Of a stretch of DNA of 64,000 nucleotides, positions 36,931-58,693 are shown in pieces. The translations under genes were made by a program, and so were the position numbers. The notes under the pieces were generated by a model. It was not told where the DNA came from and did no database searches. It saw nothing but the letters and a program-made list of their open reading frames with translations. Position 1 is the stretch's first letter, and every line of letters begins with the position of its first letter. This DNA is from Iphione sp. A-MEVVRFRX5 (lineage: Eukaryota), in contig OZ320314.1 in NCBI GenBank assembly GCA_976226885.1, forward strand, positions 97,092,001 to 97,156,000. Direction: 5' to 3'.

Positions 36931-38492
36931 GGAACTACCTCCTTGAAGAATATTCTACTGACCTTCTACCACTACAGTCAGGTTACCCCATGTCCAAATC
37001 ACTGCCTTTTCACACATTTGTGCTCTGTCCGATATTGAATTCGTTCATATATAGAAATGTGGCCTTTAGGCTACTGTACAGTTTCAGCCATCCGGTGGGC
37101 TCCAGAAGGCCTCCTTCAGAGTGAACTCCTTGGGTGCACGTGAACCCCACCACTCCCATCGAAGAGCCGTCACAGTCTACGTGGCTGATTAAAGTTGTAA
37201 CATTGAGGGAGTGTGTTGGGTATTTGAAAACCCTTGCCATGCCCATCGAGGATCTGTTCTCGTCAATGTGACTGGTCGAAATCATTAGCATTCAGGCAGT
37301 GTTTTGGGTTTGGCCACACGCATTCCGATATTCAATGTGCATAATACAGACATGGATTTAACTCGGACCAATTCATATTCGGAAATCAGATCTTCAGATA
37401 TCTGAATACATTCATAGTGAAATTTAAATGATTAAACGGAACTCCATGGATACATCACATTCACGTGGATATCGAGTGCGCAGATATCTAGTCCCGACGG
37501 TATACATACCGATCATGTTAATCAGACACTATAATTGTTGCGACGTGGGAGTGCTGCTCTTGAATCATGACACAATGCACCCTCATTATTGTTGAGGATA
37601 CAACTCCGAACAATTGGTCCCGGGATGACATAGTGGTACTGAAGGCAGTCACATGTCTTTTTGATTACTGCAAGTCTGACCGACTCTGTGATGTGAACTT
37701 CCGAGCGCTGGTCCCTTTTAGGCAAAGCGGTCTACAAAGGATGACCATGTACGGCGATAAACAAAAACATGCAGCACAAGATACCTCACCTCGCTCGAGG
37801 TCATAGGAAACAGTGAGTGAAGCATGCACACCGTCAAGCTCTATAACCGAGAGAAAAATGGCATCTCAGACGAGTGGCGAGATGGGATTTACACAGGGTA
37901 GACCACTCCGCCCTGGGTTTCCGCCGGGCTATGCTGAGGACCTTGTGAACGGATATTTTTTGATCAAAGGTCATGGTCTCCAGTGCCCAGGAGGATGCCC
38001 GAGTCGATCCGCTAACGCCTTCCCCTCCATCCTACCCTCAACACCCTTTTGCCTTAACTCCTACTCTCCCCACTCTCATCCTCTCACATAAGAGCAGCAT
38101 CTGCCCTTACCGGCTGATGCCTCCACCACCCTCCATCCCACCCACCCGCCGCCGCCCCTGGAGTGTGTTGACACCTCGGATGATCTTCTAAGAGGGTTTC
38201 CACCTCTAGCATCTCCCGGCTTCAAGCAGAAGAAGTCGCAGACTGAAATATCGCCACTGTCGGAGGAAAATCAATAACGCACCGCGCAAGATCAATGTAG
38301 AGATTCCGAAAAGACAGCCTGGACGTTTCTGATTGATTACTTCCAGTAGACCTTTGGGGAGATGTTAGAGGGGGGCTCTTTTCAACAGCAAGGCCGAAAA
38401 AAAGAAGGAAAATGGTGATGAAGATATAAAAAGAAGGCCGACCGTTGGTATATTGGGAGCCGTGGATTTCACCAGTACTTTAGCAGCCCCCA

Positions 38493-38506
38493 CCGCTAGA
38501 TGGCGG
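38493..38506 (+). promoter_or_regulatory. CTCF core motif
   Basis: CCGCTAGATGGCGG. Confidence 0.55.
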
Positions 38507-38612
38507 GTCGGGAAGGTTGGCCGCGAGGGCGCGACCAGCTCGGACGGACGGAAGGACCTCTGGGCCGGTGACGGTGAAAATGAATAGTGTGAAGACACAC
38601 GCAGCACACGAA

Positions 38613-38680
38613 ATGGCACTTTCAGGCAGCGTCAAAACCTTTGACTTTTGGTTTGTTTCTTTGCTTTCTGTGCGGGCTTG
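38613..38680 (+). CDS. Candidate first coding segment (possible signal peptide) of the DDR-like gene
   Basis: ATG at 38613 reads MALSGSVKTFDFWFVSLLSVRA, then a phase-2 donor TTG|gtgcgg. It lies in a CpG-rich stretch just after a CTCF motif. The hydrophobic core (FWFVSLLSV) is short, and I recognise no homology. Confidence 0.3.
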
Positions 38681-39086
38681 GTGCGGGCAGAGGCGGAAAA
38701 AGAGCGTGAGGGATGCCAGTGTGTTTGTCACGTACACACGATCTCTCTCCATTGTCGAGATAATATAGAGACTTAGATGTTGGAGTCAAAAAGGAGAAAC
38801 TAGTAGTTCTATTCAGATAATAATGAAAGGTGCGGTCTAAGATGATTATGAACGAATTGGATGCATCCTTTTCATAGTATTTTTTGTATTTCGTAGAAAA
38901 TAGGTGATTGGCTTTCCTTTATGTTTACAAAAGAAATATTATGAAATTTGCAACTTGTTCATAAAATACTATTTCTGTCTTCACTAAGAGAGTTTTTCTC
39001 TTTATTTTAAGTTAATGACGGAGGATAATTGAAGCGCTGATGAAAACTTGCTTGTATTAAATCATATTTTTTCTCTTTTTCTGCAG

Positions 39087-39129
39087 GTAAGTACCGAGTA
39101 AATATACGCATGCGTCGATTTACTGAAAG
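39087..39129 (+). other. 43-nt exon-like segment starting at a recursive-splice-type AG|GTAAGT junction
   Basis: tttttt-ctc-tttttctgcAG|GTAAGT at 39086/39087, and a second consensus donor AAG|GTAAGT at 39129/39130. Confidence 0.55.
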
Positions 39130-39464
39130 GTAAGTGCAAAGCGAGGATCATATCAGGAACTACCCGTAAGAAACACTAAACATTGGTAAAAACACTAATA
39201 TGGCTTTCTTCATCACAACTCATGATATTGCGGACTCGTGATGATAAATCTGCGCCATCCCTGGGTTGTGCCATTACCAACTCACACCAAAGCTGAAGCA
39301 AAGGTACACCACATCTCTGCTTTACTGAAGGGACTGAGTTGGTATTTTTAAATAACACAAATCTGTGCATCTACTACACCTGTAATAATTCCGAACTGAA
39401 AATCTAGCAGTCATAAGAGTTTGGACTGTTTATACTCAGAAATGGCGGCAGGCCCGTAATCAGA

Positions 39465-39522
39465 TGTGTGTGTGTCTGTGTGTGTGTGTGTGGTTGAGGG
39501 GGAGTGGGTGGGTGGGTGGGTG
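39465..39522. repeat. (TG)n followed by (GGGT)4
   Basis: tgtgtgtgtgtctgtgtgtgtgtgtgtg...gggtgggtgggtggg. Confidence 0.85.
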
Positions 39523-39843
39523 GCTGTTTCTTTATGGTTCAAGTAGACAGGATTTTGTTAATCTAATTTCAGTCCTATATTGCATTTGTATAGGACAGTA
39601 TATGTAATTTAAAGCATGGTCGCCATCTCTACTTCATTTTGATTCTGTGTAGGAGGTGTGGCCAATATATCATATACTGCACAGCTGCACCTAAGAAACT
39701 AAGCCCTCTGTTGATGGCGTAAAAGCCAATGTAGCTCGCTATGGAGTTCGAGAGACTAAATTATAGTAAGATAATACATGTTGCATTTATAGAAATACAG
39801 CCGAAGTATATAAAGGAATTTACCGCAGCTTAGGGTTCTAGTC

Positions 39844-40100
39844 TTTAAACTCACCACAACTCAGCTTTTTCTCCTCAAATTCACTGCAAATCAGGTTTTT
39901 GTTCCTCACATCCATCGCACCTCATGTTTTTCGTCCTCAAATTCCCTGCAACTCAGGATTTCTCCTCAAATTCACGGAAATTGCCTCAAATTCACCATAA
40001 CTCAGGTTTGTACTCCTCAAATTTACTAATATCCCTAATATTAACTCTGGGGATTATTTCCTCGAATTCACAACAAATCAAGTCTTTACTCCTCAAAATC
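39844..40100. repeat. Degenerate minisatellite with a unit of about 31 bp, about 8 copies
   Basis: CCTCAAATTC-like unit starts at 39873, 39904, 39935, 39964, 39984, 40015, 40060 and 40091. Consensus is roughly CCTCAAATTCACNGCAACTCAGGTTTTTNNT. Confidence 0.85.
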
Positions 40101-42255
40101 ATAAAAATGCGATACTTTAAGTGAGGTACACACCTGTAAGGCTGTATTCACATGTATTCATATCTTTCTACATCTCTAGACCCATAGTAATCTATTTCAT
40201 AGAATCAAGTAAACCCTTCACATGTGGCAGTATCTGTCGTATGATGTTACAGGTACGGACCCATACCTGTACCTACTGAATCCATCCTGAACGAATTTTC
40301 TATGGCTATGGATCCATTTCCCATATCTAGAATGCAATAGTACAGAGACATCTGGTTAACATATTATAGCAGTTTATACACACTCTATTGTTTTTTTTGT
40401 GGCTGTGGACCCATAGACATGTTTTTTTTTCTTACGCATACATGTGAACTTTGCCTAAGGCATTCGCCTGATACATTGTATATTAACACGAGGTGTATGC
40501 ATCCTTTACATGCAGCATGAGGAGCTGTCAGTTTCATCATGAAAGCCAAGTCCTTCTTCCAAGTGGTACTAAACTTCTCTGTGAGGGTGTTAGATCAAGC
40601 ACCCGAACCTCCCCTCGTTGTTGGCCTGTAGGGTGTGAGTTACTAAAGCTGTATGTTAGTTCTAGAGCGAATTTGCGCGGGTACGATTTGGCGATGGGAC
40701 AAATAGTCGCAGAACCATTTCCTCAACATACAATATGCACAATGTTACCGATGCACGAATGAGCCCCCACCTCAATATTTTGTACTTTTGTTTCCTGACA
40801 ATCTCTGCATTTTTTAAAGCAAGGATTTTCTTACAAAAAGAACCTTTTTTAAACTTACGTATGATTCATACATTAGGAAACTTCAGTCATGAGTTGCGCT
40901 CATGACTCAAACAAATGTAGGCATCCGGGTTAAGCTTCCAAAATGTGGGACATCTTCATCGTCGTTGTTCGTCGGTGGGCCTTTGCCAAGAGAAAAATAG
41001 TCCAACAAAAAGTGATGAGCGGACGTAACTGGCAGTTCAAGTTACATGTATCACTAGTGGATGGGCACTGATAAATAGGCTCCTCTTACATCTCATCTTT
41101 CCCCTTTTTTCACATCGGCCTACAAGAGAAGATCCTACATGAAGCGCGCCACAGACAGATTAAGGACAGCTCCAAAAAGGTTCTCAGTTCTGTGCCGGGT
41201 CTTGTACCAAGCCTTTTACAGATGTCTCAGGCCTCCCAGTCACAAACCCAGTGGCTGGGGTCTCCCCCGTTCTTCTCGCCAACCGTCTGATGAAAGGCCG
41301 TTTGCTGGGCAGAATAGAAGGGTTTCAAGCCTTTGTACCCCATTGCAAGTGTTCTCATTACAGGCTCAAACTGTGACACAGAGCAGTAATGAGCACGAAA
41401 GCTTAAAATCAGCCGCGGCGAGTGCCACATTTTACATGAAGTCTCTGTATGATATTGGCGCTAAGTACGTACTTCCTCCCGAGGCTGTTCATGTCTATTT
41501 AACCCATCCACTGTCCAGGTACGCGTATACATTGTATTTGATTTTACCACACATACTTTAAACTATATCTCACAGTGTCCCATTCCAAAAATATTAGCCA
41601 GCATCACAAAATATTCATTGCTGCTTTCCATTTTACCAGTGTAATTTTTATTACACACTTCGATATGGTTGTAAAGATTGTGCGTTTACAATGTCATCGT
41701 TGAAAGCGTGGACAGGCCGTTGTTAAGTCCATTATGCAGTGTAGGGCCATTAGTATTCGGGAGCAGCCGCACGGGAGTCTGTTCACACGCAATACATTCG
41801 CACACATTCCTTTGATGAGAAGCAGCAATCCTTTATAGTGATTTAGTATCAAAAACCTCTCTGTGTGTCGGGGGATGGCGGTGTTCAAATTGACTAGGTC
41901 GCGTATGGTGATATGAATTTGACGTGTACTCGGTAGCTTTCCGAAACCCTTTTACGAGCACAATGTAAATGAAAAGGATGTTGGCCGCACATGATTTAAA
42001 ATGAGGCATTGTGGAACAAGGAAAATTCAAACCGAAGTGCCTGTTTTCACACAGAGCGCCTCTCATTGCTGCTCATAAAGTGAAAAGGTATACATGTCGA
42101 TTTATTGCAATAAACCACCAGGAGCGTATGGCTTTGTTTTTCAAGTTTTAACCTTTCGTTCAGGCAATATTGGGTTATTTATTTACAAGATTGGACATGG
42201 TAGTGTGCAAGGGAATTAAAATTTTCAAATACGTTGTGCGGCGTTAATATCGATA

Positions 42256-42327
42256 TTCTCTTCTTCTTCTTCTTCTTTTTCTTTTTCTCCTTCTTCTTCT
42301 TCTTCTTCTTCTTCTTCTTCTTCTTCT
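42256..42327. repeat. (TTC)n microsatellite
   Basis: Interrupted TTC run. It explains the spurious poly-Arg ORF 42244-42459 (-). Confidence 0.95.
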
Positions 42328-43457
42328 ATTTAGCATATTAGCGTCCGTGGCAGTGCAATTAGACAAACTCAAATGCAGCATGTTTGCACAACACAATGAC
42401 GATGAAAATGCGAAGATGTATCGAATATAATTATTGAGCTTTGCCGTACATTTCAACATCTTTCTCCACCTAACAACAAGTCAATAAAAATACAGACGAA
42501 TGATAATAACGGTATCATGGGTAATTCTATTTTCCCATGGTTATCCTGACGAGAAGAGCACCTTTTTTTCGCTTTTTCTCTAGCAGGGCTTTTCAGGGCA
42601 AGACTGCTCATGTTCCAAGTATCTCGTGTAGAATTCACCTGCAGTGAACAGACCCCGCCACCAACGCCTACTCAACCCCTGCTGGTCGCGACCGGATGTG
42701 ATAAACGTCGCACATTCATTATGGTATAGCTAACAGAAGGAAGCCAGCAATCTCATACAGCAGCCCCCGCCCCTCGCTTTCTGCCCACCTGGCTTCCGCC
42801 TGCACCCCCCCCACACACACCCGCCCTCCTCGCCCGCCATACTAGCGCTGATCCTGACCCCTTCTCCGTAGCTCAGCGATCAACCTACTCGCCCTTCTCC
42901 ACTGTCACCGCACCTCTGCTGCTTGTTTCCAGTCGACAGACAGGCGTTGGTGGCATCGAGTTGTCGACAGACCGACGCTCGGCAGACACATATACATTTT
43001 CACGAGTGCGCCCTGTATGCCGTGTTATTTCGTTAGGGTGTTTTTTTTCTGAGTCTTGTTTTTCGGTTTTCATCGGCTAACTTTCCCGCCTTCGCCCTAC
43101 TGGAAAATGAGCCAATCTCACGCTGACGTGATTCAAGGCGAGAGAGTGAAGAAGAATCAAGCGGGAGACGCTGACAAAAAAGACCCTTACGACTTACAGA
43201 AAAAAAGTGCCATGGGAACCGGTGCCGAGGGTCGAAGTGACAGTTGGGCACGGATGAACGCCACGGGAGGGCATGTGGGCGACTCGTATTACTTGCTATC
43301 TGGCCCTTCCTCACGGGTTATGGGACGTAAACGGCCAGGCTACAGCTAATATCCCATCCCATGCCCCTCCCATGAGCTAGCGTCTGCCATCTCATACGGC
43401 CCAACGCGAGCCAGGAATAATTTAATCTATCACGCAGCTGCCCACCAGAATGCTGAA

Positions 43458-43597
43458 TCCCTCCCTCCCTTCTTCCTCTTCCCATTCCTCCATCCCTTCA
43501 TCTCTCCCTCCCTCATTCCCTTCCTCTTCCCCCCTATTCTTTCCCCCCCCCTCCTCCCTCCCTTCGTGCTCCTTCCCCTCTCTCCCTCCCTCCCCCC
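43458..43597. repeat. Homopyrimidine/homopurine tract of about 140 bp
   Basis: Almost entirely C/T on the + strand, ending just before caacAG (43601-43602). Confidence 0.85.
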
Positions 43598-43849
43598 AAC
43601 AGGGTGACTTATCTGCTACGAAGTAGACGGCAACTGGGTGGGGAGCCTATGTATCATATCACCGGAATCTGATGTTACTCATCGGGAACGGATGAAGAGC
43701 TGCGGTCTAGAAAGCCTAAGATTCATGCGTGGCAAACGTTCGACGACCTTCTATCCCAACTACATGGGTGGCTGGATGGGTGGGGCTCTCAGAGGGAAAG
43801 GATGATAGTGAAAATAAGGTTATACATGCTTTTGTATGTCTCTCTTGAC

Positions 43850-44050
43850 GTATGTATATATATATATATGTATGCATGTATGTATCTACTATGTATGCAT
43901 GTACATGTTTGTACAATGTACATGTAGATTATACACATAGTTATGTATGTACCTGAATTCACGTATTATTTGTTAGAATTATCTCTCTCATTATATACAC
44001 ACATATATATGCACATGCGCACGCATCTGTGGGACCATGTATGTATATGA
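43850..44050. repeat. TA/TACATG-rich low-complexity region
   Basis: Runs of tatata, tgtatgcatgta and gtacatgt. Confidence 0.75.
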
Positions 44051-47000
44051 ATATACCAATTACTCAGAAGCGTTCCCCTCAAGAGGCTCCCTTAAAAGCC
44101 TTGCCAGCAGCTCCTTACAAGCAAGTGGAGTCGACAAAAGAGAGCTGCTATGCCTTCCTGTACGACCTTCCAGGTGTCTTTAAGTAAGCCCTCGACAAGA
44201 TCGGAACCAATAAAACATGCGGCCGTGCAAGTCGGACTCTTTGGTCGAGGTTCAATAACATCAGCTTTATTGGATGAGGTGGCCGCGCAAGCACTTAGAT
44301 AATCTTATCAGACGCCGATAACGACGCCGGCGGAGACGACGTCCCCCCCCCCCCTGCCCATCTGTATGTGAACCATGTGAGGGTGATTTATCAAAACATT
44401 ATTCTTATCGGTCCGTCCGAGCTTCTAAGCCCGGATCTTCAGATAACGTTCTGCTGCCAAATAATCGAAGAAGCTCCTTTTTTGCGCTTATAGCCAAGGG
44501 ATGGGCGGTGTCGTCTTTCGCTCTCACGCTTTTGGGAAGCCACGTCCGGAGGCCTTTCCGAGGAAATCATGCTCTCAAGATCCAGGTCGAATCGACCACA
44601 TCGTTTTCCCCCCCTGATAATGAATTTCTCTCTGATGGGAAAGTCACCAATATCTGGCAGTGGAAGGACGCAATTGGGTAGCAACTTAGACCAATTAATT
44701 CTGGAATGTGCCTATGACATTACAAAAGATACCTCGCCGCTTGACTTTCTTTTGCCACACGCTACAAGTACCAAGCGTTTCTCAGCATCACTGTGGTTAA
44801 GGTAATAACTATGGCTACTGTATTTTTTTCTCTACAAAGGGAACGTCTTGATTTTCAAGTTGCGAGGTCTTCGATAGGGGCTTTGTCATAAGAAATATTC
44901 ACAATTATAGATGCATGGTATTCATAACTGTGCATGCAGCTTGATTCTTAGTGTGAAAATATCAGTACTGAAGCAGTTCAATTTATGGACACCTCACCTT
45001 TACAAGAGGGCAATTATTTTCTACACAAAATCAACCTACATATGAGCGCAACCTTCAAATGGGTTTGTCTGGTGGGAGTGGCTAATAAACATTGTGCATT
45101 TACAAAATATTCTTCAGGACAGTAGGCATTACTGTCCTCTCCGCAGGAGACGAAATGGTCCAGGTTTATTTTCAAATGGGTCATTTCCTTTCGGAAAATT
45201 AAAGCAAAGGTTAAAGCAAAGCAAATTAAAAGCAAAGGTTCTCTCATAAAAGAAAAATTTGATCAGTTAGTGGCTTCGGGGTCAAGCATTAAGGATGATG
45301 GCAACCTCAAGGGAGAAGCTACTGTTGCGGACAAAAGATAAAGCAAATATTGTTACACTATCCAGGATCTATAATAGTAGGGCATAAGGTGAGTCTTCTG
45401 AAGCATCTCGTTCTTCGTTGCTTTAGTCCAGTGATACATTGTTCACAACATTACCAGGTAATGTACCGTGACTGGTCTGTAAAATGGCAGAGGGTTCACT
45501 GTAAGAAATGGACAATGCACCTTACTCACTTTTATGTCTGTTACCATCTACAGTTCAGAAACATTGACACTGCATATCTAAAAAGGTAAACTCATATGAT
45601 AAATATGGCTTCAGGCCTTCTGCCACCTATACATTGTTAAGTTCTACTGGTCATGAATACTTCCTGTACATCATTTCTTCCGAGGATTTTATACGCCACA
45701 CGAAAAAAAAACTGTTATACTTCTCCCTTTGTTGAAAGGTGCACCATAAATGCCAGGCTGTATAGGTTGCATCCTGAGGAAGCGTTGATGGCAAGGGCAG
45801 GGCGGGAAGTGCCTTGGTGTAGGGGAGAAGTGAGGACGATATACAAGACTCATCAAACAAAGAATGCTGCCAATGAATTGCGGCCCGGCACTTGGTAGCG
45901 ATTTATGAGTGTTACTCACAGTATCCGCCGCCACTATCGGCGCGGGTAACGGCCGGCGACGCCTTTGTTGTTCGTTCATAAAGCGGCGCGGCAAGATCGG
46001 AGCTTGAGGGACGATTGGGTTTGTTCCAGCGCCTGCCGAGTGGAGCGGTGCTAAAGCTGCAGGTGCTTGGACCATAATGGGACGAGTCCCCCTATAGCGG
46101 TGTGTATTTGGTGGAGATGTTGGACTGGTGGGAGCTGGAGACCGGCTGTCGTCACGTGTGCCACAAGGAAGATGGGGTATAGCGACGACGAGTACGTCTA
46201 ATGCCTTCAACAGATGGCCTCAAGCACACCGCCAAGCATGTGTGTTGATATGACCTGCCTATTTACCTGAGGACTGCTGGGACTGACGCAAATCCCGCTC
46301 AGCAAGCGCGAGGTCCGGGCCTTTTCCAGACACGAGTGGGAAGGGTGCATAGAATTGCTATACCTGAAAAGGCGGGCATAACAACCTTCCGCTATGCTAC
46401 TATATAATGATGTCTTACTGAATGCCATTATAGTAAGTGGCTGAGAACCTGGATAGAATGCACTGTGTACGTTCGTAAAGATATTTGACACACATTCACA
46501 GCTTAATACTCTGTGAAGAGCAAAATGTGGCAACAGCCCGGCAGCCTTCCTCTCTAGATAACAGCACAGGTTTATAATGGTATCTTGTTGAATACCCTTC
46601 AGAGAATGCAGCTCAATCCTGAAAGAGGGCGTTGTACACGTTCATAAAGACCTCTGGCAGACATTCAGGTCTTAACAATACAGCACCATATAAACAACAA
46701 AATAACCGTCGTCTTGATATAATGGTGCTACTTTAGAATGCCAGCTTACTGAATACCTTTATATACCATTATAGTATGCAACTTGAAACTCCAGAATACA
46801 TTTTGTATGTCCTTAACACACTTTCACATCGTAAGAATTGAGTACTTTATAAACAAGAAAATCATATCAAAACAGCTGGCGTCGTAAACACTGATACCGT
46901 ATGAAGTGATGGATTGATATTTTGGTTAGAAAAAAGAAAAGCTGATACCGCTCTAGAGACTGCCATGAAGGTAAACCAGACAAACTTATCCTAAGTAATT

Positions 47001-48240
47001 CTACGGGGTATAATTTTCATCGTTTATCAGTATAAATGGAAGTGGATACAAGAACGGGAATCATTTTATGCTGTTGGACTCTTTTGCCATAGGGAATCTG
47101 CGCTTAACCTTAGAGAACTTGAACTTTTTTCTTCTCCTTTTTTAAAAATGCTACGAGGCACTTCATCCTCCGTGACTTCTCTTCCTGGAAGTAATACCGA
47201 CATCAGCATTCGTCGCCATGACGATAGTCCATACACAAATATTTCCTCACCCTTTGGCACCATGAATGTAGTTTTTGTTGTAGTCTCAGACCCCTCTAGC
47301 TGGCACCTTTCCCATTTGAGGGGTAAATATTTATGTTGGGAGGCGGAGTAGCTTTTGGTCTCCTTCACGCAACACATGTCGGATTCCGACTTAGTACGTC
47401 GGGCAGATCCTCAGCAATGCTGCATACTGTAGAGTAAGGCGATTACAACTTATATATGTGGCCGGAGACCATACACTCTGCTTACGTATACTGTGAAGTA
47501 GGAAGCAGTCTTTGTTGAAGCCATGCAGTGGCTTCTGTACCTACCTCATGACCGCTCAATCTGACGTATGAAATATCGAGTACGTATAAACCAAGGTTGA
47601 AATATAATCATTCATATGAATAGTCATTTCGTAATCAACCCGTAGGATATGTAAATATATTTACCATCAATTTCACCGTAAACTATTCGTACGTAAAGTT
47701 TTCAACATTTCCTCCACGTCAGGTCTGTAGTTATTAAGATGGTAGAGAAATCAGCACAGGCCATTGGGAAAAATAAATGATTTTTGTCTAACTTTCCCAT
47801 CCACTTTTCCCGTCACTCCGATTTTTAAAAGCACTAGAAGACATCGTATCAGTTGGGACGGAACCATACATTTTTTAAAAGACCTGTCATAACCTGCAGG
47901 CAATGCCTCCGGGCTTCACAGGGAAAATTACATTAACGCTACGTTCAAAAGCCGCGTGGCCGGCAACTTTTTATACCGAACGTACATATATCTCTACATG
48001 TAACAGCCGCACGAAATAGGTTGATTGTACATTCAATGTTTATATTAACCTTTATTTAGCCAGACGTTTTCGATGGATTCTATAAAAAACACAAAATATT
48101 TCTCTTTCTTTTGGACAGCAAAGACTTTACATATTGCACTTGCCGCTTACGTGCATGTATTCCAAGGACTTAGAGGGTTTCCAAAATACTATATTTACGC
48201 TACCCCTCCATATCGGCAACACAAATCCGTTATATGAGTA

Positions 48241-48298
48241 TCACGTGATGATGTGCCTGTCACGTGATTGATTCATATATCAATTCAGGTCACGTGGT
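48241..48298. promoter_or_regulatory. Cluster of three TCACGTG E-boxes
   Basis: TCACGTGA (48241), GTCACGTGAT (48259), GTCACGTGGT (48289). Confidence 0.45.
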
Positions 48299-48532
48299 AT
48301 AATCGACACACTAAGTCAGTATCTCTATGGCGAAGTGGTTCATTACATTAACGTTTTATAGTTTCTGGGACGAGGTAATTGTTAGTGAACCTTACATATG
48401 GGTAAACAATTGTAACTCTAATACATACGTACATACATACATATAACGCGCCTACACTTACATACATGCCTTCTGAGCTGAGCCTCTTCAATGTGTATGT
48501 ACTTTGTCCACTTTATGACACAAACATGCAAT

Positions 48533-48661
48533 NNNNNNNNNNNNNNNNNNNNNNNNNNNNNNNNNNNNNNNNNNNNNNNNNNNNNNNNNNNNNNNNNNNN
48601 NNNNNNNNNNNNNNNNNNNNNNNNNNNNNNNNNNNNNNNNNNNNNNNNNNNNNNNNNNNNN
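48533..48661. other. Assembly gap (129 N)
   Basis: Run of N characters; the true length is unknown. Confidence 0.99.
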
Positions 48662-49499
48662 TATCAGCTTCTAATAAATCGGTTGCTGAAATTCGCAGGC
48701 AGGGGGATGTACTCTATTCGGAAAAAAAACTAATGCCACCAGATGTGGTTCAATACATGCTGTTGTAGGGTCTGATTACATAAATCCGTGGATGTATCCG
48801 TGCAAGTGGTAGCGTCCATCTCTCCTGTTACCACCCGCCTCGCTATCCCCGCCGCGCCTGCTTCTCAAGCATTTACATGAAACCTGCAAAATGATATACA
48901 TGCTTCAAACCAGCTGTTCAATGGAAATAAGAGAGGGATGTGAGGTTTGAAGGGCACCGCAGTGAACCGCATGGGGTTGTCACTGAAACATTACAAGGCA
49001 ATGGGCCTGAAATACATTGACGTAAATATGTCGACAGTAATATATTGCAACATTACATACCTTTTTAGATCATAAAGATTGAGATAATTCCTGAAATAAT
49101 GGCCATATTTACATATATGTATATATATACATAGCTTTCAACACCAACGTTGATAGTTGCTGACTGTGTATGGTATGGTAGGGTAACTGTTTTTTACAAT
49201 CAAACCTTCTGGCTCTGAAGGTATTTCAATCGGGATAGTAGTATTTTTTTGGGTGATGTTTACCCTGTAGGAGAATAGAACCCATATGTGGCAACAGCTA
49301 CAGTTAGACACTTCATGGGGTCTTAGGTGCTATACCAATCAACGTACTTGGGGCGCATTGTAATGGAATCTGGTGTACAGTTACAGGCGGCTTTACTTAA
49401 ATGCTATATTATTGTTTGGTAGCTGAACGTCAGGGACGCCATGAAATGTCACAGAGGTGATGCTAGCTGCAGGTAGAACCGGAGCTGGCTTTTCTACAG

Positions 49500-49561
49500 T
49501 CCTGGATCGTGGGGAGCCGATAGAAATGCGGCCTCCAAACCACTAGACGTTATTCATCATG
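49500..49561 (+). CDS. Candidate 62-nt coding exon (phase 2 to phase 1) upstream of the discoidin exon
   Basis: Acceptor ...ttctacAG| with a short pyrimidine tract, strong donor ATG|gtgagt. The open frame x-PGSWGADRNAASKPLDVIHH-(A) joins in frame to 58588. No homology recognised. Confidence 0.3.
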
Positions 49562-58587: not shown

Positions 58588-58693
58588 CCCAATGTCGAGT
58601 GTCGCTTGGCATGCAGTCTGGAGAGATCCCAGATGAAGCCATCACGTCGAGCTCCTCCTACGACCCGGACAGCGTGGGACCCGAGAACGCACG
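58588..58693 (+). CDS. DDR: Internal coding exon (106 nt, phase 1 to phase 2) encoding the N-terminal part of a discoidin/F5-8 type C domain; most likely a discoidin domain receptor tyrosine kinase
   Basis: Acceptor tttttatttactttcAG|, donor ACG|gtagga. Hand translation: x-QCRVSLGMQSGEIPDEAITSSSSYDPDSVGPENA-R. It fits the discoidin start motif C..xLGM.xg.IPD..I.aSS. About 16 of 35 positions match human DDR1 as I recall it ([34 protein letters not shown]), and SSSYD..SVGP.NAR is typical of invertebrate DDRs. The domain call is firmer (about 0.9) than DDR orthology (about 0.7), because other F5/8C proteins start similarly. This frame is absent from the supplied ORF track. Confidence 0.85.

What the first reader, a model, noticed from the sequence alone, without database searches (positions are those of the whole stretch)
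39061..39135. Recursive-splice site with a 43-nt RS-exon layout in a probable invertebrate chordate DDR gene
Seen: a strong pyrimidine tract plus CAG is followed immediately by GTAAGT (39087-39092), and a second perfect donor AAG|GTAAGT lies 43 nt later. This was the only + strand CAG|GTRAG I found by eye, and it lies on the DDR strand. Established: AG|GT ratchet points subdivide long introns in Drosophila (e.g. Ubx). In humans, recursive sites in long-intron adhesion and guidance genes (e.g. CADM1/2, ROBO2, NTM) are defined through a downstream RS-exon that is usually skipped and often carries a stop codon. Inference: the same layout may operate here. The segment has stops in two of three frames. 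Splicing the candidate exon ending at 38680 onto it gives TG|G TAA (Trp-stop), so inclusion would be a poison event, whereas recursive skipping regenerates TTG|GTAAGT. It also carries an ATG (39110, MRRFTE-S) in frame with the 49500 and 58588 exons, so it could instead start a signal-less isoform. Caveat: if the upstream exon really ends at 38680, the first segment is only about 400 nt, shorter than usual for recursive splicing.
Basis: partly seen in the sequence, partly recalled or inferred. Interest (0 to 1): 0.75.

Follow-up and report, generated by a model that had tools for sequence, protein, structure and literature searches.

The report
Likely recursive splice site, DDR intron
About 400 bases into the first intron of a collagen-receptor (DDR) gene of an unidentified invertebrate, a strong intron end is fused to a perfect intron start with a 43-base decoy exon behind it; this design is far commoner in the genome than chance allows, so it probably works as a recursive splice site, but no RNA data could be obtained.

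Summary
A 16-base pyrimidine run plus CAG abuts GTAAGT at 39087, and a second AAG|GTAAGT follows 43 nt later. Both lie on the sense strand of a discoidin domain receptor (DDR) gene, 406 nt after its signal-peptide exon.

The simple motif is barely enriched in this 1.18-Gb genome (118 hits against 83 in the control). The full design (acceptor, donor, then a second donor 20-50 nt on) is strongly enriched. It occurs 29 times, about 21 outside tandem arrays, against 0-2 in four kinds of control, and the excess fades as the spacing grows.

The site therefore belongs to a real class of recursive-splice ("RS-exon") modules. The scan had already flagged several elsewhere in this genome.

Its position is atypical. 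The first segment is 406 nt, the intron only 10.8 kb, and the gene's longest intron has no such site. A gate or poison-exon role fits better than subdividing a long intron.

No RNA run was listed. Four distant orthologues and the neighbouring paralogue lack the module. The "chordate" label is not supported: the closest DDRs found are lophotrochozoan.

Verdict: a probable but unproven recursive splice site.

The parts
38613..38680 (+). Coding part of DDR exon 1 (signal peptide, 22 codons plus TG). An in-frame upstream ATG lies at 38580. The donor TTG|GTGCGG at 38681 is weak.
   Evidence: Translation and phase. This is the only ATG-plus-hydrophobic exon in 25000-49499 that is in phase with exon 2, apart from a low-complexity TG repeat. 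U1 pairing is 4 of 11 positions, -4.2 kcal/mol. The exon model is inferred, not shown by RNA.
38681..39086 (+). First intron segment (406 nt), AT-rich, which would be removed in step 1.
   Evidence: Coordinates. GC falls from 0.57 to 0.29 after exon 1.
39037..39041 (+). Candidate branch point CTGAT (A at 39040), 46 nt before the acceptor AG. No AG occurs between 39035 and 39084.
   Evidence: Script scan and sequence. Inferred.
39067..39086 (+). Acceptor: 16 consecutive pyrimidines, then G, then CAG.
   Evidence: pyrimidine fraction 0.85 over the 20 nt before NAG, against 0.55 for the exon 2 acceptor.
39087..39092 (+). Recursive donor GTAAGT. After joining to exon 1 it reads TTG|GTAAGTAC.
   Evidence: U1 pairing is -13.5 kcal/mol unspliced and -10.5 for the regenerated junction.
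39087..39129 (+). 43-nt RS-exon (decoy or poison exon). Inclusion after exon 1 gives TGG TAA.
   Evidence: Its length sits at the centre of the genome-wide class (28-56 nt, median 44; coordinates).
39130..39135 (+). Downstream donor AAG|GTAAGT, which would define the RS-exon.
   Evidence: U1 pairing -11.7 kcal/mol.
39130..49499 (+). Remaining intron (10.4 kb) up to the exon 2 acceptor. It contains an N run at 48533-48661, which I left untouched.
49500..49561 (+). DDR exon 2 (62 nt), open only in the frame that follows a phase-2 exon. Donor ATG|GTGAGT.
58588..58693 (+). DDR exon 3, the start of the discoidin domain (QCRVSLGMQSGEIPDEAITSSSSYD...).
   Evidence: tblastn to DDR2-like proteins.

Best explanation
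This is a recursive-splice module of the RS-exon type, placed at the 5' end of intron 1 of a DDR receptor-kinase gene.

Proposed mechanism (inferred):
1. The strong acceptor at 39086 and the donor at 39130 define a 43-nt exon. It is transcribed about 400 nt after exon 1, and 10.4 kb before the weaker exon 2 acceptor exists.
2. Exon 1 is therefore first spliced to 39087, removing 406 nt. This recreates a good donor, TTG|GTAAGT, at the junction.
3. Either this regenerated donor is used with the exon 2 acceptor, removing the 43 nt and leaving a normal mRNA with no trace. Or the donor at 39130 is used and the exon stays, putting TGG-TAA right after codon 22 (an unproductive transcript).

The two donors are about equally strong, so the module probably acts as a gate on productive DDR mRNA rather than as a way of cutting a long intron into pieces.

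Shown: the sequence layout, the host gene and strand, and the genome-wide excess of the design. Inferred: every splicing step.
For: 1. Anatomy. There are 16 pyrimidines plus CAG, a 50-nt AG-free zone with CTGAT at -46, and GTAAGT directly after the AG. A second AAG|GTAAGT lies 43 nt on.

2. Host. The site is on the sense strand of a DDR gene whose exons 1-3 are mutually in phase.

3. Class-level excess in the own genome.
- Y6-N-YAG|GTRAGT-N(20-50)-AGGTRAGT occurs 29 times, about 21 outside tandem arrays, against 2 for the reversed pattern.
- With the order of the two elements swapped: 10, of which 1 is outside arrays.
- With GT changed to TG in the first or in the second donor: 0 and 0.
- The excess fades with spacing: about 7 at 51-81 nt and about 3 at 120-150 nt.
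- RS-exon lengths in the class are 28-56 nt with median 44. Only 8 of 21 are multiples of three, so these are not coding cassettes.

4. The layout matches published RS-exons.
- A roughly 50-nt cryptic exon with its own donor, whose inclusion is set by donor competition (PMC8605326; PMC6224609).
- RS-exons that carry premature stops and act as a binary switch (PMC5126111).

5. Kinetic argument (inference). A strong acceptor with exon definition 400 nt after exon 1 would poison most transcripts unless the exon can be respliced out. The GTAAGT start provides exactly that.

6. The region is single copy, not a repeat.
Against: - No RNA evidence of any kind; no RNA run was listed.
- The first segment is 406 nt, whereas nearly all fly recursive segments exceed 1 kb and average 9.1 kb (PMC6110457). 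The intron is only 10.8 kb, and the gene's longest intron (16 kb) has no such site.
- The regenerated donor (-10.5 kcal/mol, 8 of 11) is not stronger than the downstream donor (-11.7). In flies, a weaker ratchet donor favours inclusion.
- There is no composite module in the first introns of four DDR orthologues: Owenia, Lingula, Liolophura and Tubulanus. There is none in the tail-to-tail paralogue either.
- Exon 1 itself is a model. Its donor is weak, though several other donors in this gene look weak by the same crude measure.
Confidence: 0.58

Rival explanations
1. It is an ordinary alternative cassette or 5' regulatory exon of 43 nt that is included or skipped in one step. The GTAAGT at its start is never reused as a donor.
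For: - Strong acceptor and donor.
- Inclusion gives an early stop, as in many poison exons.
- The downstream donor is at least as strong as the regenerated one.
- The short 406-nt upstream intron is typical of ordinary exons.
Against: - The chance that an ordinary exon starts with GTRAGT is about 1 in 2000.
- Genome-wide, the same pattern starting with TGRAGT instead has 0 hits against about 21. The donor at the exon start is therefore what is enriched.
- Single-step skipping would require exon 1 to ignore a much stronger and earlier acceptor.
Confidence: 0.15
2. The two GTAAGT sites act as donors or U1-binding sites only. They could be alternative donors of a longer or alternative first exon starting near 38.7-39.0 kb (a dual-specificity AG|GT site). 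Or they could be promoter-proximal U1 sites that suppress premature cleavage, for example at the ATTAAA at 39056-39061. On this reading the pyrimidine tract is incidental.
For: - Both sites lie about 630-680 nt from the presumed transcription start (TATAAAA at 38425).
- An ATTAAA followed by a U-rich run sits just upstream.
- The native exon 1 donor is weak.
- Dual-specificity sites are known in human (PMC10156609).
Against: - Extending exon 1 to 39086 runs into a stop and gives no DDR protein.
- The order-swapped control shows that donor pairs near pyrimidine tracts are not enriched as such.
- A 16-nt pyrimidine run, CAG and a 50-nt AG-free zone are what an acceptor needs, not what a donor needs.
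Confidence: 0.12
3. It is a chance juxtaposition of splice-like motifs with no function.
For: - The 9-mer alone is not significant in the window or in the genome (118 against 83).
- No conservation was found.
Against: - Controls give 0-2 composite sites in 1.18 Gb against about 21 observed, so at most about one in ten is chance.
- This one also lies on the sense strand inside an intron, at the modal spacing.
Confidence: 0.08

Closest known systems
Drosophila intronic ratchet points with cryptic RS-exons (Ubx, kuz, Bx; Hatton 1998, Duff 2015, Joseph 2018; PMC8605326, PMC6110457)
   Same: - Fused pyrimidine-tract-YAG|GTAAGT motif.
- A short cryptic exon of about 50 nt with its own donor, needed for exon definition.
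- The outcome is set by competition between the two donors.
- A preference for first introns.
   Different: - Fly sites sit deep in long introns (segments nearly all over 1 kb, mean 9.1 kb). Here the first segment is 406 nt.
- In flies the regenerated donor is usually the stronger of the two. Here it is equal or slightly weaker.
- Fly sites are conserved among drosophilids. Here no close relative could be examined.
Vertebrate RS-exons in long genes (CADM1/2, ROBO2, NTM; Sibley 2015, as summarised in PMC5126111 and PMC6224609)
   Same: - RS-exon definition comes first.
- Inclusion brings a premature stop.
- A "binary switch" between resplicing and inclusion.
- Host genes are cell-surface adhesion or receptor genes.
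   Different: - Vertebrate cases lie in introns of more than 100 kb.
[quoted passage not shown] None of this could be tested here.
Annotated or expressed RS-exons and poison cassette exons (PMC6224609)
   Same: An exon that rebuilds a 5' splice site at its upstream junction and can be removed after being joined. Inclusion would be unproductive.
   Different: Those exons are seen in mRNA and are mostly coding and constitutive. This one is non-coding after exon 1, and its inclusion has not been observed.
Dual-specificity AG|GT splice sites and intrasplicing (Zhang 2007, Parra 2008, as cited in PMC10156609 and PMC5126111)
   Same: One AG|GT can serve as either acceptor or donor. Nested splicing near alternative first exons changes which 5' end is made.
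   Different: There is no evidence here for alternative promoters, or for use of the site as a donor of an upstream exon.

Membership tests
Recursive splice site with RS-exon | Acceptor (pyrimidine tract, YAG) directly fused to a consensus donor (GTRAGT) | tested here: met
   16 pyrimidines, then G, then CAG|GTAAGT at 39067-39092.
Recursive splice site with RS-exon | A second strong donor within about 100 nt downstream that defines a short exon | tested here: met
   AAG|GTAAGT at 39127-39135, exon length 43 nt. The class in this genome peaks at 28-56 nt.
Recursive splice site with RS-exon | The motif or layout is more frequent than chance in the genome concerned | tested here: met
   29 hits (about 21 outside arrays) against 2, 1, 0 and 0 in four controls. 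The single motif alone is only 118 against 83.
Recursive splice site with RS-exon | Lies deep in a long intron and splits it into kilobase-scale segments | tested here: not met
   The first segment is 406 nt and the intron 10.8 kb. In flies nearly all segments exceed 1 kb (PMC6110457).
Recursive splice site with RS-exon | The regenerated donor competes successfully with the RS-exon donor | tested here: inconclusive
   U1 pairing is -10.5 against -11.7 kcal/mol, 8 of 11 consensus positions each. This is a crude measure, not a trained splice-site model.
Recursive splice site with RS-exon | RNA intermediates: an exon1^RS junction, a lariat with its 5' end at the RS site, sawtooth coverage | not testable with these tools
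   No RNA run was listed for 38400-39400, so no reads could be laid.
Recursive splice site with RS-exon | Conservation of the AG|GT and of the downstream donor in related species | tested here: inconclusive
   Only distant orthologues could be fetched (Owenia, Lingula, Liolophura, Tubulanus), plus the in-genome paralogue. None has a composite module. Introns are not alignable at that distance.
Discoidin domain receptor (host gene) | Discoidin (F5/8 type C) domain, DS-like domain and tyrosine kinase domain, in that order | tested here: met
   - PF21114 at E 1.6e-66.
- PF07714 at E 2e-30 and 2e-22.
- PF00754 on one exon only, at E 3e-4, below the cut-off.
- Exon-by-exon tblastn to DDR2-like proteins.
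Poison (NMD-targeting) cassette exon | Inclusion introduces a premature stop upstream of later exon junctions | tested here: met
   TG from exon 1 plus GTAA gives TGG TAA. Sensitivity to nonsense-mediated decay (NMD) was not testable.

The most novel reading that the evidence does not exclude
A promoter-proximal recursive-splice gate. In this non-insect, non-vertebrate animal, most DDR transcripts would first be spliced from a weak first-exon donor to a decoy exon only 406 nt away. Productive mRNA would then form only when the regenerated consensus donor wins over the decoy's own donor. On this reading recursive splicing sets receptor output, or relays a weak donor into a strong one for the 10.4-kb jump, rather than subdividing a long intron.
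Probability: 0.3. Interest if true: 0.6.

Novelty: new member of a known kind. Interest (0 to 1): 0.42.

Why it matters
Recursive splicing has been demonstrated in flies and vertebrates. In the paper library I could search, I found no report of it for molluscs or annelids.

The composite RS-exon design is clearly over-represented in this genome, which argues that the mechanism is used here too. This site would add a case where the module sits next to the first exon. There it could control how much functional receptor mRNA is made.

It also matters for annotation. Gene predictors may wrongly include or ignore such 43-nt exons.

The scan had already flagged several recursive-splice candidates elsewhere in this genome, so this is one further instance rather than a first.

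Tried and rejected
RNA evidence
- The look-up of sequencing runs (kind rna) listed none, and its cap is one call. Read laying was therefore unusable.

Context of the other class members
I could not see whether the other roughly 20 sites lie in giant introns or near first exons. I did not try another route.

Organism identity
- The representative search returned mostly unnamed fragments.
- A first word search seeded with a crab DDR was uninformative.
- The Patella-seeded search listed no protein of the window's own genome.
- The species stays unknown. I did not compare chordate DDRs directly.

Orthologue loci
- Four isoform look-ups were not on record.
- The Lineus and Patella genes exceed 100 kb, so no DNA was returned.

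Alternative first coding exons
- There is no better signal-peptide exon in 25-49.5 kb.
- Upstream + strand donors at 11.7, 17.0, 20.0 and 21.0 kb do not end a signal-peptide frame. That rules out a longer first segment starting from an upstream coding exon.

"Weak donor relay" idea
- Exon 1's donor is weak, but so are several others in this gene by the same crude measure, so I kept this only as speculation.

Other checks
- Pfam found nothing on ten long ORFs in and around intron 1.
- Two literature searches were badly aimed.
- Sibley 2015 is not held, so I cite it through reviews.

Joined exon model
- I did not send the joined exon 1-2-3 protein model to any search tool.

Full report
WHAT IS THERE

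- Sixteen pyrimidines run from 39067 to 39082, followed by G and then CAG (39084-39086).
- GTAAGT follows directly at 39087-39092.
- A second AAG|GTAAGT lies at 39127-39135, so a 43-nt segment (39087-39129) is bounded by an acceptor and a donor and itself begins with a donor.
- Upstream there is a 50-nt stretch free of AG, with a branch-point-like CTGAT (A at 39040) 46 nt before the AG.
- CAGGTRAGT occurs once on the + strand of the window.
- Of all + strand AG|GTRAG sites in 114 kb around the gene, only this one has a pyrimidine-rich tract (0.90).
- The 500 nt around it are single copy in the genome.

HOST GENE

The + strand carries a discoidin domain receptor (DDR) gene.

Exon 3 (58588-58693) encodes the start of the discoidin domain. 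Further exons lie downstream of the window in G000:C2, which I fetched as loci L002-L015. They give a DS-like domain (PF21114, E 1.6e-66) and two tyrosine-kinase pieces (PF07714). They align exon by exon with DDR2-like proteins.

Exon 2 (49500-49561, acceptor ttttctacag, donor ATG|GTGAGT) is open in only one frame and needs a preceding exon that ends with two bases of a codon.

The exon that fits is ATG 38613 to 38680. It encodes MALSGSVKTFDFWFVSLLSVRA plus TG. It sits in a GC-rich, promoter-like stretch with TATAAAA at 38425-38431, a short upstream ORF and an in-frame upstream ATG at 38580.
- A scan of 25.0-49.5 kb found no better signal-peptide exon.
- Strong + strand donors further upstream do not end such a frame.
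- Its donor, TTG|GTGCGG, is weak (4 of 11 consensus positions, -4.2 kcal/mol to the U1 5' end). Several other donors of this gene also look weak by this crude measure.

The exon 1 model is an inference. I did not send the joined exon 1-2-3 protein to any search tool; exons were handled one at a time, by reference.

- Joining exon 1 to 39087 gives TGG TAA.
- Skipping by resplicing regenerates TTG|GTAAGT.
- ATG 39110 is in phase with exon 2.

That ATG has C at -3 and at +4, and the product would lack a signal peptide. I regard the "signal-less isoform" as unlikely.

IS IT MORE THAN CHANCE?

The single motif is not.
- In the window, CAGGTRAGT occurs 3 times against 1.07 expected.
- In the whole 1.18-Gb genome, Y8-N-CAGGTAAGT occurs 118 times against 83 for the reversed pattern.

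The composite is. I counted Y6-N-YAG|GTRAGT followed by AGGTRAGT at various spacings, and several controls. "Outside arrays" is my own count of hits that do not lie in tandem arrays.

| Pattern | Hits | Outside arrays | Built-in reversed control |
|---|---|---|---|
| Second donor 20-50 nt downstream | 29 | about 21 | 2 |
| Order swapped (donor first, then the fused site) | 10 | 1 | 2 |
| GT changed to TG in the first donor | 0 | 0 | 2 |
| GT changed to TG in the second donor | 0 | 0 | 0 |
| Second donor 51-81 nt downstream | 24 | about 7 | 1 |
| Second donor 120-150 nt downstream | 14 | about 3 | 4 |

The excess therefore fades as the spacing grows.

From the coordinates, the RS-exons of the class are 28-56 nt long with median 44. 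Only 8 of 21 are multiples of three. Their sequences are unrelated to one another. They are therefore neither a repeat family nor coding cassette exons.

The design is directional, needs both GT dinucleotides, and prefers a short exon. This is what the exon-definition model of recursive splicing predicts (PMC6224609; PMC8605326; PMC6110457).

At most about one in ten such sites should be chance, and the present site (43 nt) is a central member of the class. My independent counts agree in direction. Other notes report similar candidates in Fat, Dachsous and Homer introns.

WHAT COULD NOT BE SHOWN

No RNA run was listed for 38400-39400, so no junction, lariat or coverage evidence exists here.

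Close relatives could not be found.
- The species is unknown.
- Among the proteins I could compare, the best matches are chiton, nemertean, limpet and brachiopod DDR2-like proteins, all at a similar distance.
I did not test chordate DDRs directly.

I fetched four orthologue loci: Owenia L016, Lingula L017, Liolophura L018 and Tubulanus L019. The Owenia and Liolophura first introns are about 50 kb, and none of the four genes has a composite module.

A tail-to-tail paralogue (DDR-B, minus strand, about 34-47 kb beyond the window end) is compact and also has none. Only the discoidin-start exon is DNA-similar between the two genes.

At these distances the absence is weak evidence. It does show that the module is not an old feature of DDR genes.

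HOW IT MOST LIKELY WORKS

The acceptor at 39086 is much stronger than the exon 2 acceptor (pyrimidine fraction 0.85 against 0.55; the exon 2 acceptor has an AG 17 nt upstream). It is also transcribed 10.4 kb earlier.

If it is functional at all, exon 1 will usually be joined to 39087 first. The junction then reads TTG|GTAAGTAC (-10.5 kcal/mol), which competes with AAG|GTAAGTGC at 39130 (-11.7).
- Use of the regenerated donor removes the 43 nt and yields normal mRNA.
- Use of the downstream donor keeps them and stops translation at codon 24.

A strong exon 400 nt after exon 1 would be harmful unless it can be respliced out. The GTAAGT start provides that, and I take this as the reason for the design.

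The donors are nearly matched, the first segment is only 406 nt, and the gene's 16-kb intron has no such site. A gate or poison-exon role therefore fits better than "cutting a long intron short". Nearly all fly recursive segments exceed 1 kb and average 9.1 kb, although human lariat data show recursive sites in small and medium introns too (PMC10156609).

All splicing steps are inferred.

RIVALS

- An ordinary one-step cassette exon. This is disfavoured by the TG-swap control.
- Donor-only or U1-binding sites near the promoter. An ATTAAA at 39056-39061 sits just upstream, which fits this idea. It is disfavoured by the full acceptor anatomy and by the order-swapped control.
- Chance, at most about 10%.

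VERDICT

This is a probable but unproven recursive-splice module in an atypical, exon-proximal position, in an invertebrate lineage for which I found no published report. It is one more instance of a class the scan has already met in this genome.

The N run at 48533-48661 was left alone.

Noticed in passing
L009/L004 (G000:C2 about 97190380-97202804, minus strand): A second DDR gene (DDR-B) lies tail-to-tail with this one. It has compact introns (0.3-3.5 kb). Its discoidin-start exon is 80% identical in DNA to exon 3 of the window gene, while its 5' exons and introns are unrelated.
   Followed up: partly
G000:C11:7984592-7985031; C13:16208271-16209172; C22:2276590-2276983; C2:6972488-6972898: Tandem arrays whose 38-80-nt unit carries a pyrimidine tract plus CAGGTGAGT or CAGGTAAGT. 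They inflate raw genome counts of recursive-site patterns and must be removed before judging enrichment.
   Followed up: no
window 38425-38612: The 5' leader of the DDR gene has TATAAAA at 38425-38431, a 23-codon upstream ORF (ATG 38500, stop at 38569-38571) and an in-frame upstream ATG at 38580. That ATG would add 11 residues before the signal peptide.
   Followed up: no
window 39056-39061: An ATTAAA hexamer followed by the U-rich tract lies directly before the two consensus donors. This layout would also fit U1-mediated suppression of a promoter-proximal poly(A) site.
   Followed up: no
window 48533-48661: A run of 129 N inside DDR intron 1, about 840 nt upstream of exon 2.
   Followed up: no
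window 39464-39600: A TG-rich low-complexity stretch with strong GC skew lies about 330 nt downstream of the RS-exon. It reads MCVCLCVCVW in one frame.
   Followed up: no
window 49466-49476: A second AG|GT juxtaposition (gctgcag|gtagaa) lies 27 nt before the exon 2 acceptor. Its donor and tract are weak, so it is probably incidental.
   Followed up: no
L016 35780-35815 (Owenia fusiformis DDR intron 1): The only moderately recursive-like site in the 52-kb first intron of the Owenia orthologue is tactaatag|GTAAGTGAAA (pyrimidine fraction 0.65). No strong donor follows within 200 nt.
   Followed up: partly
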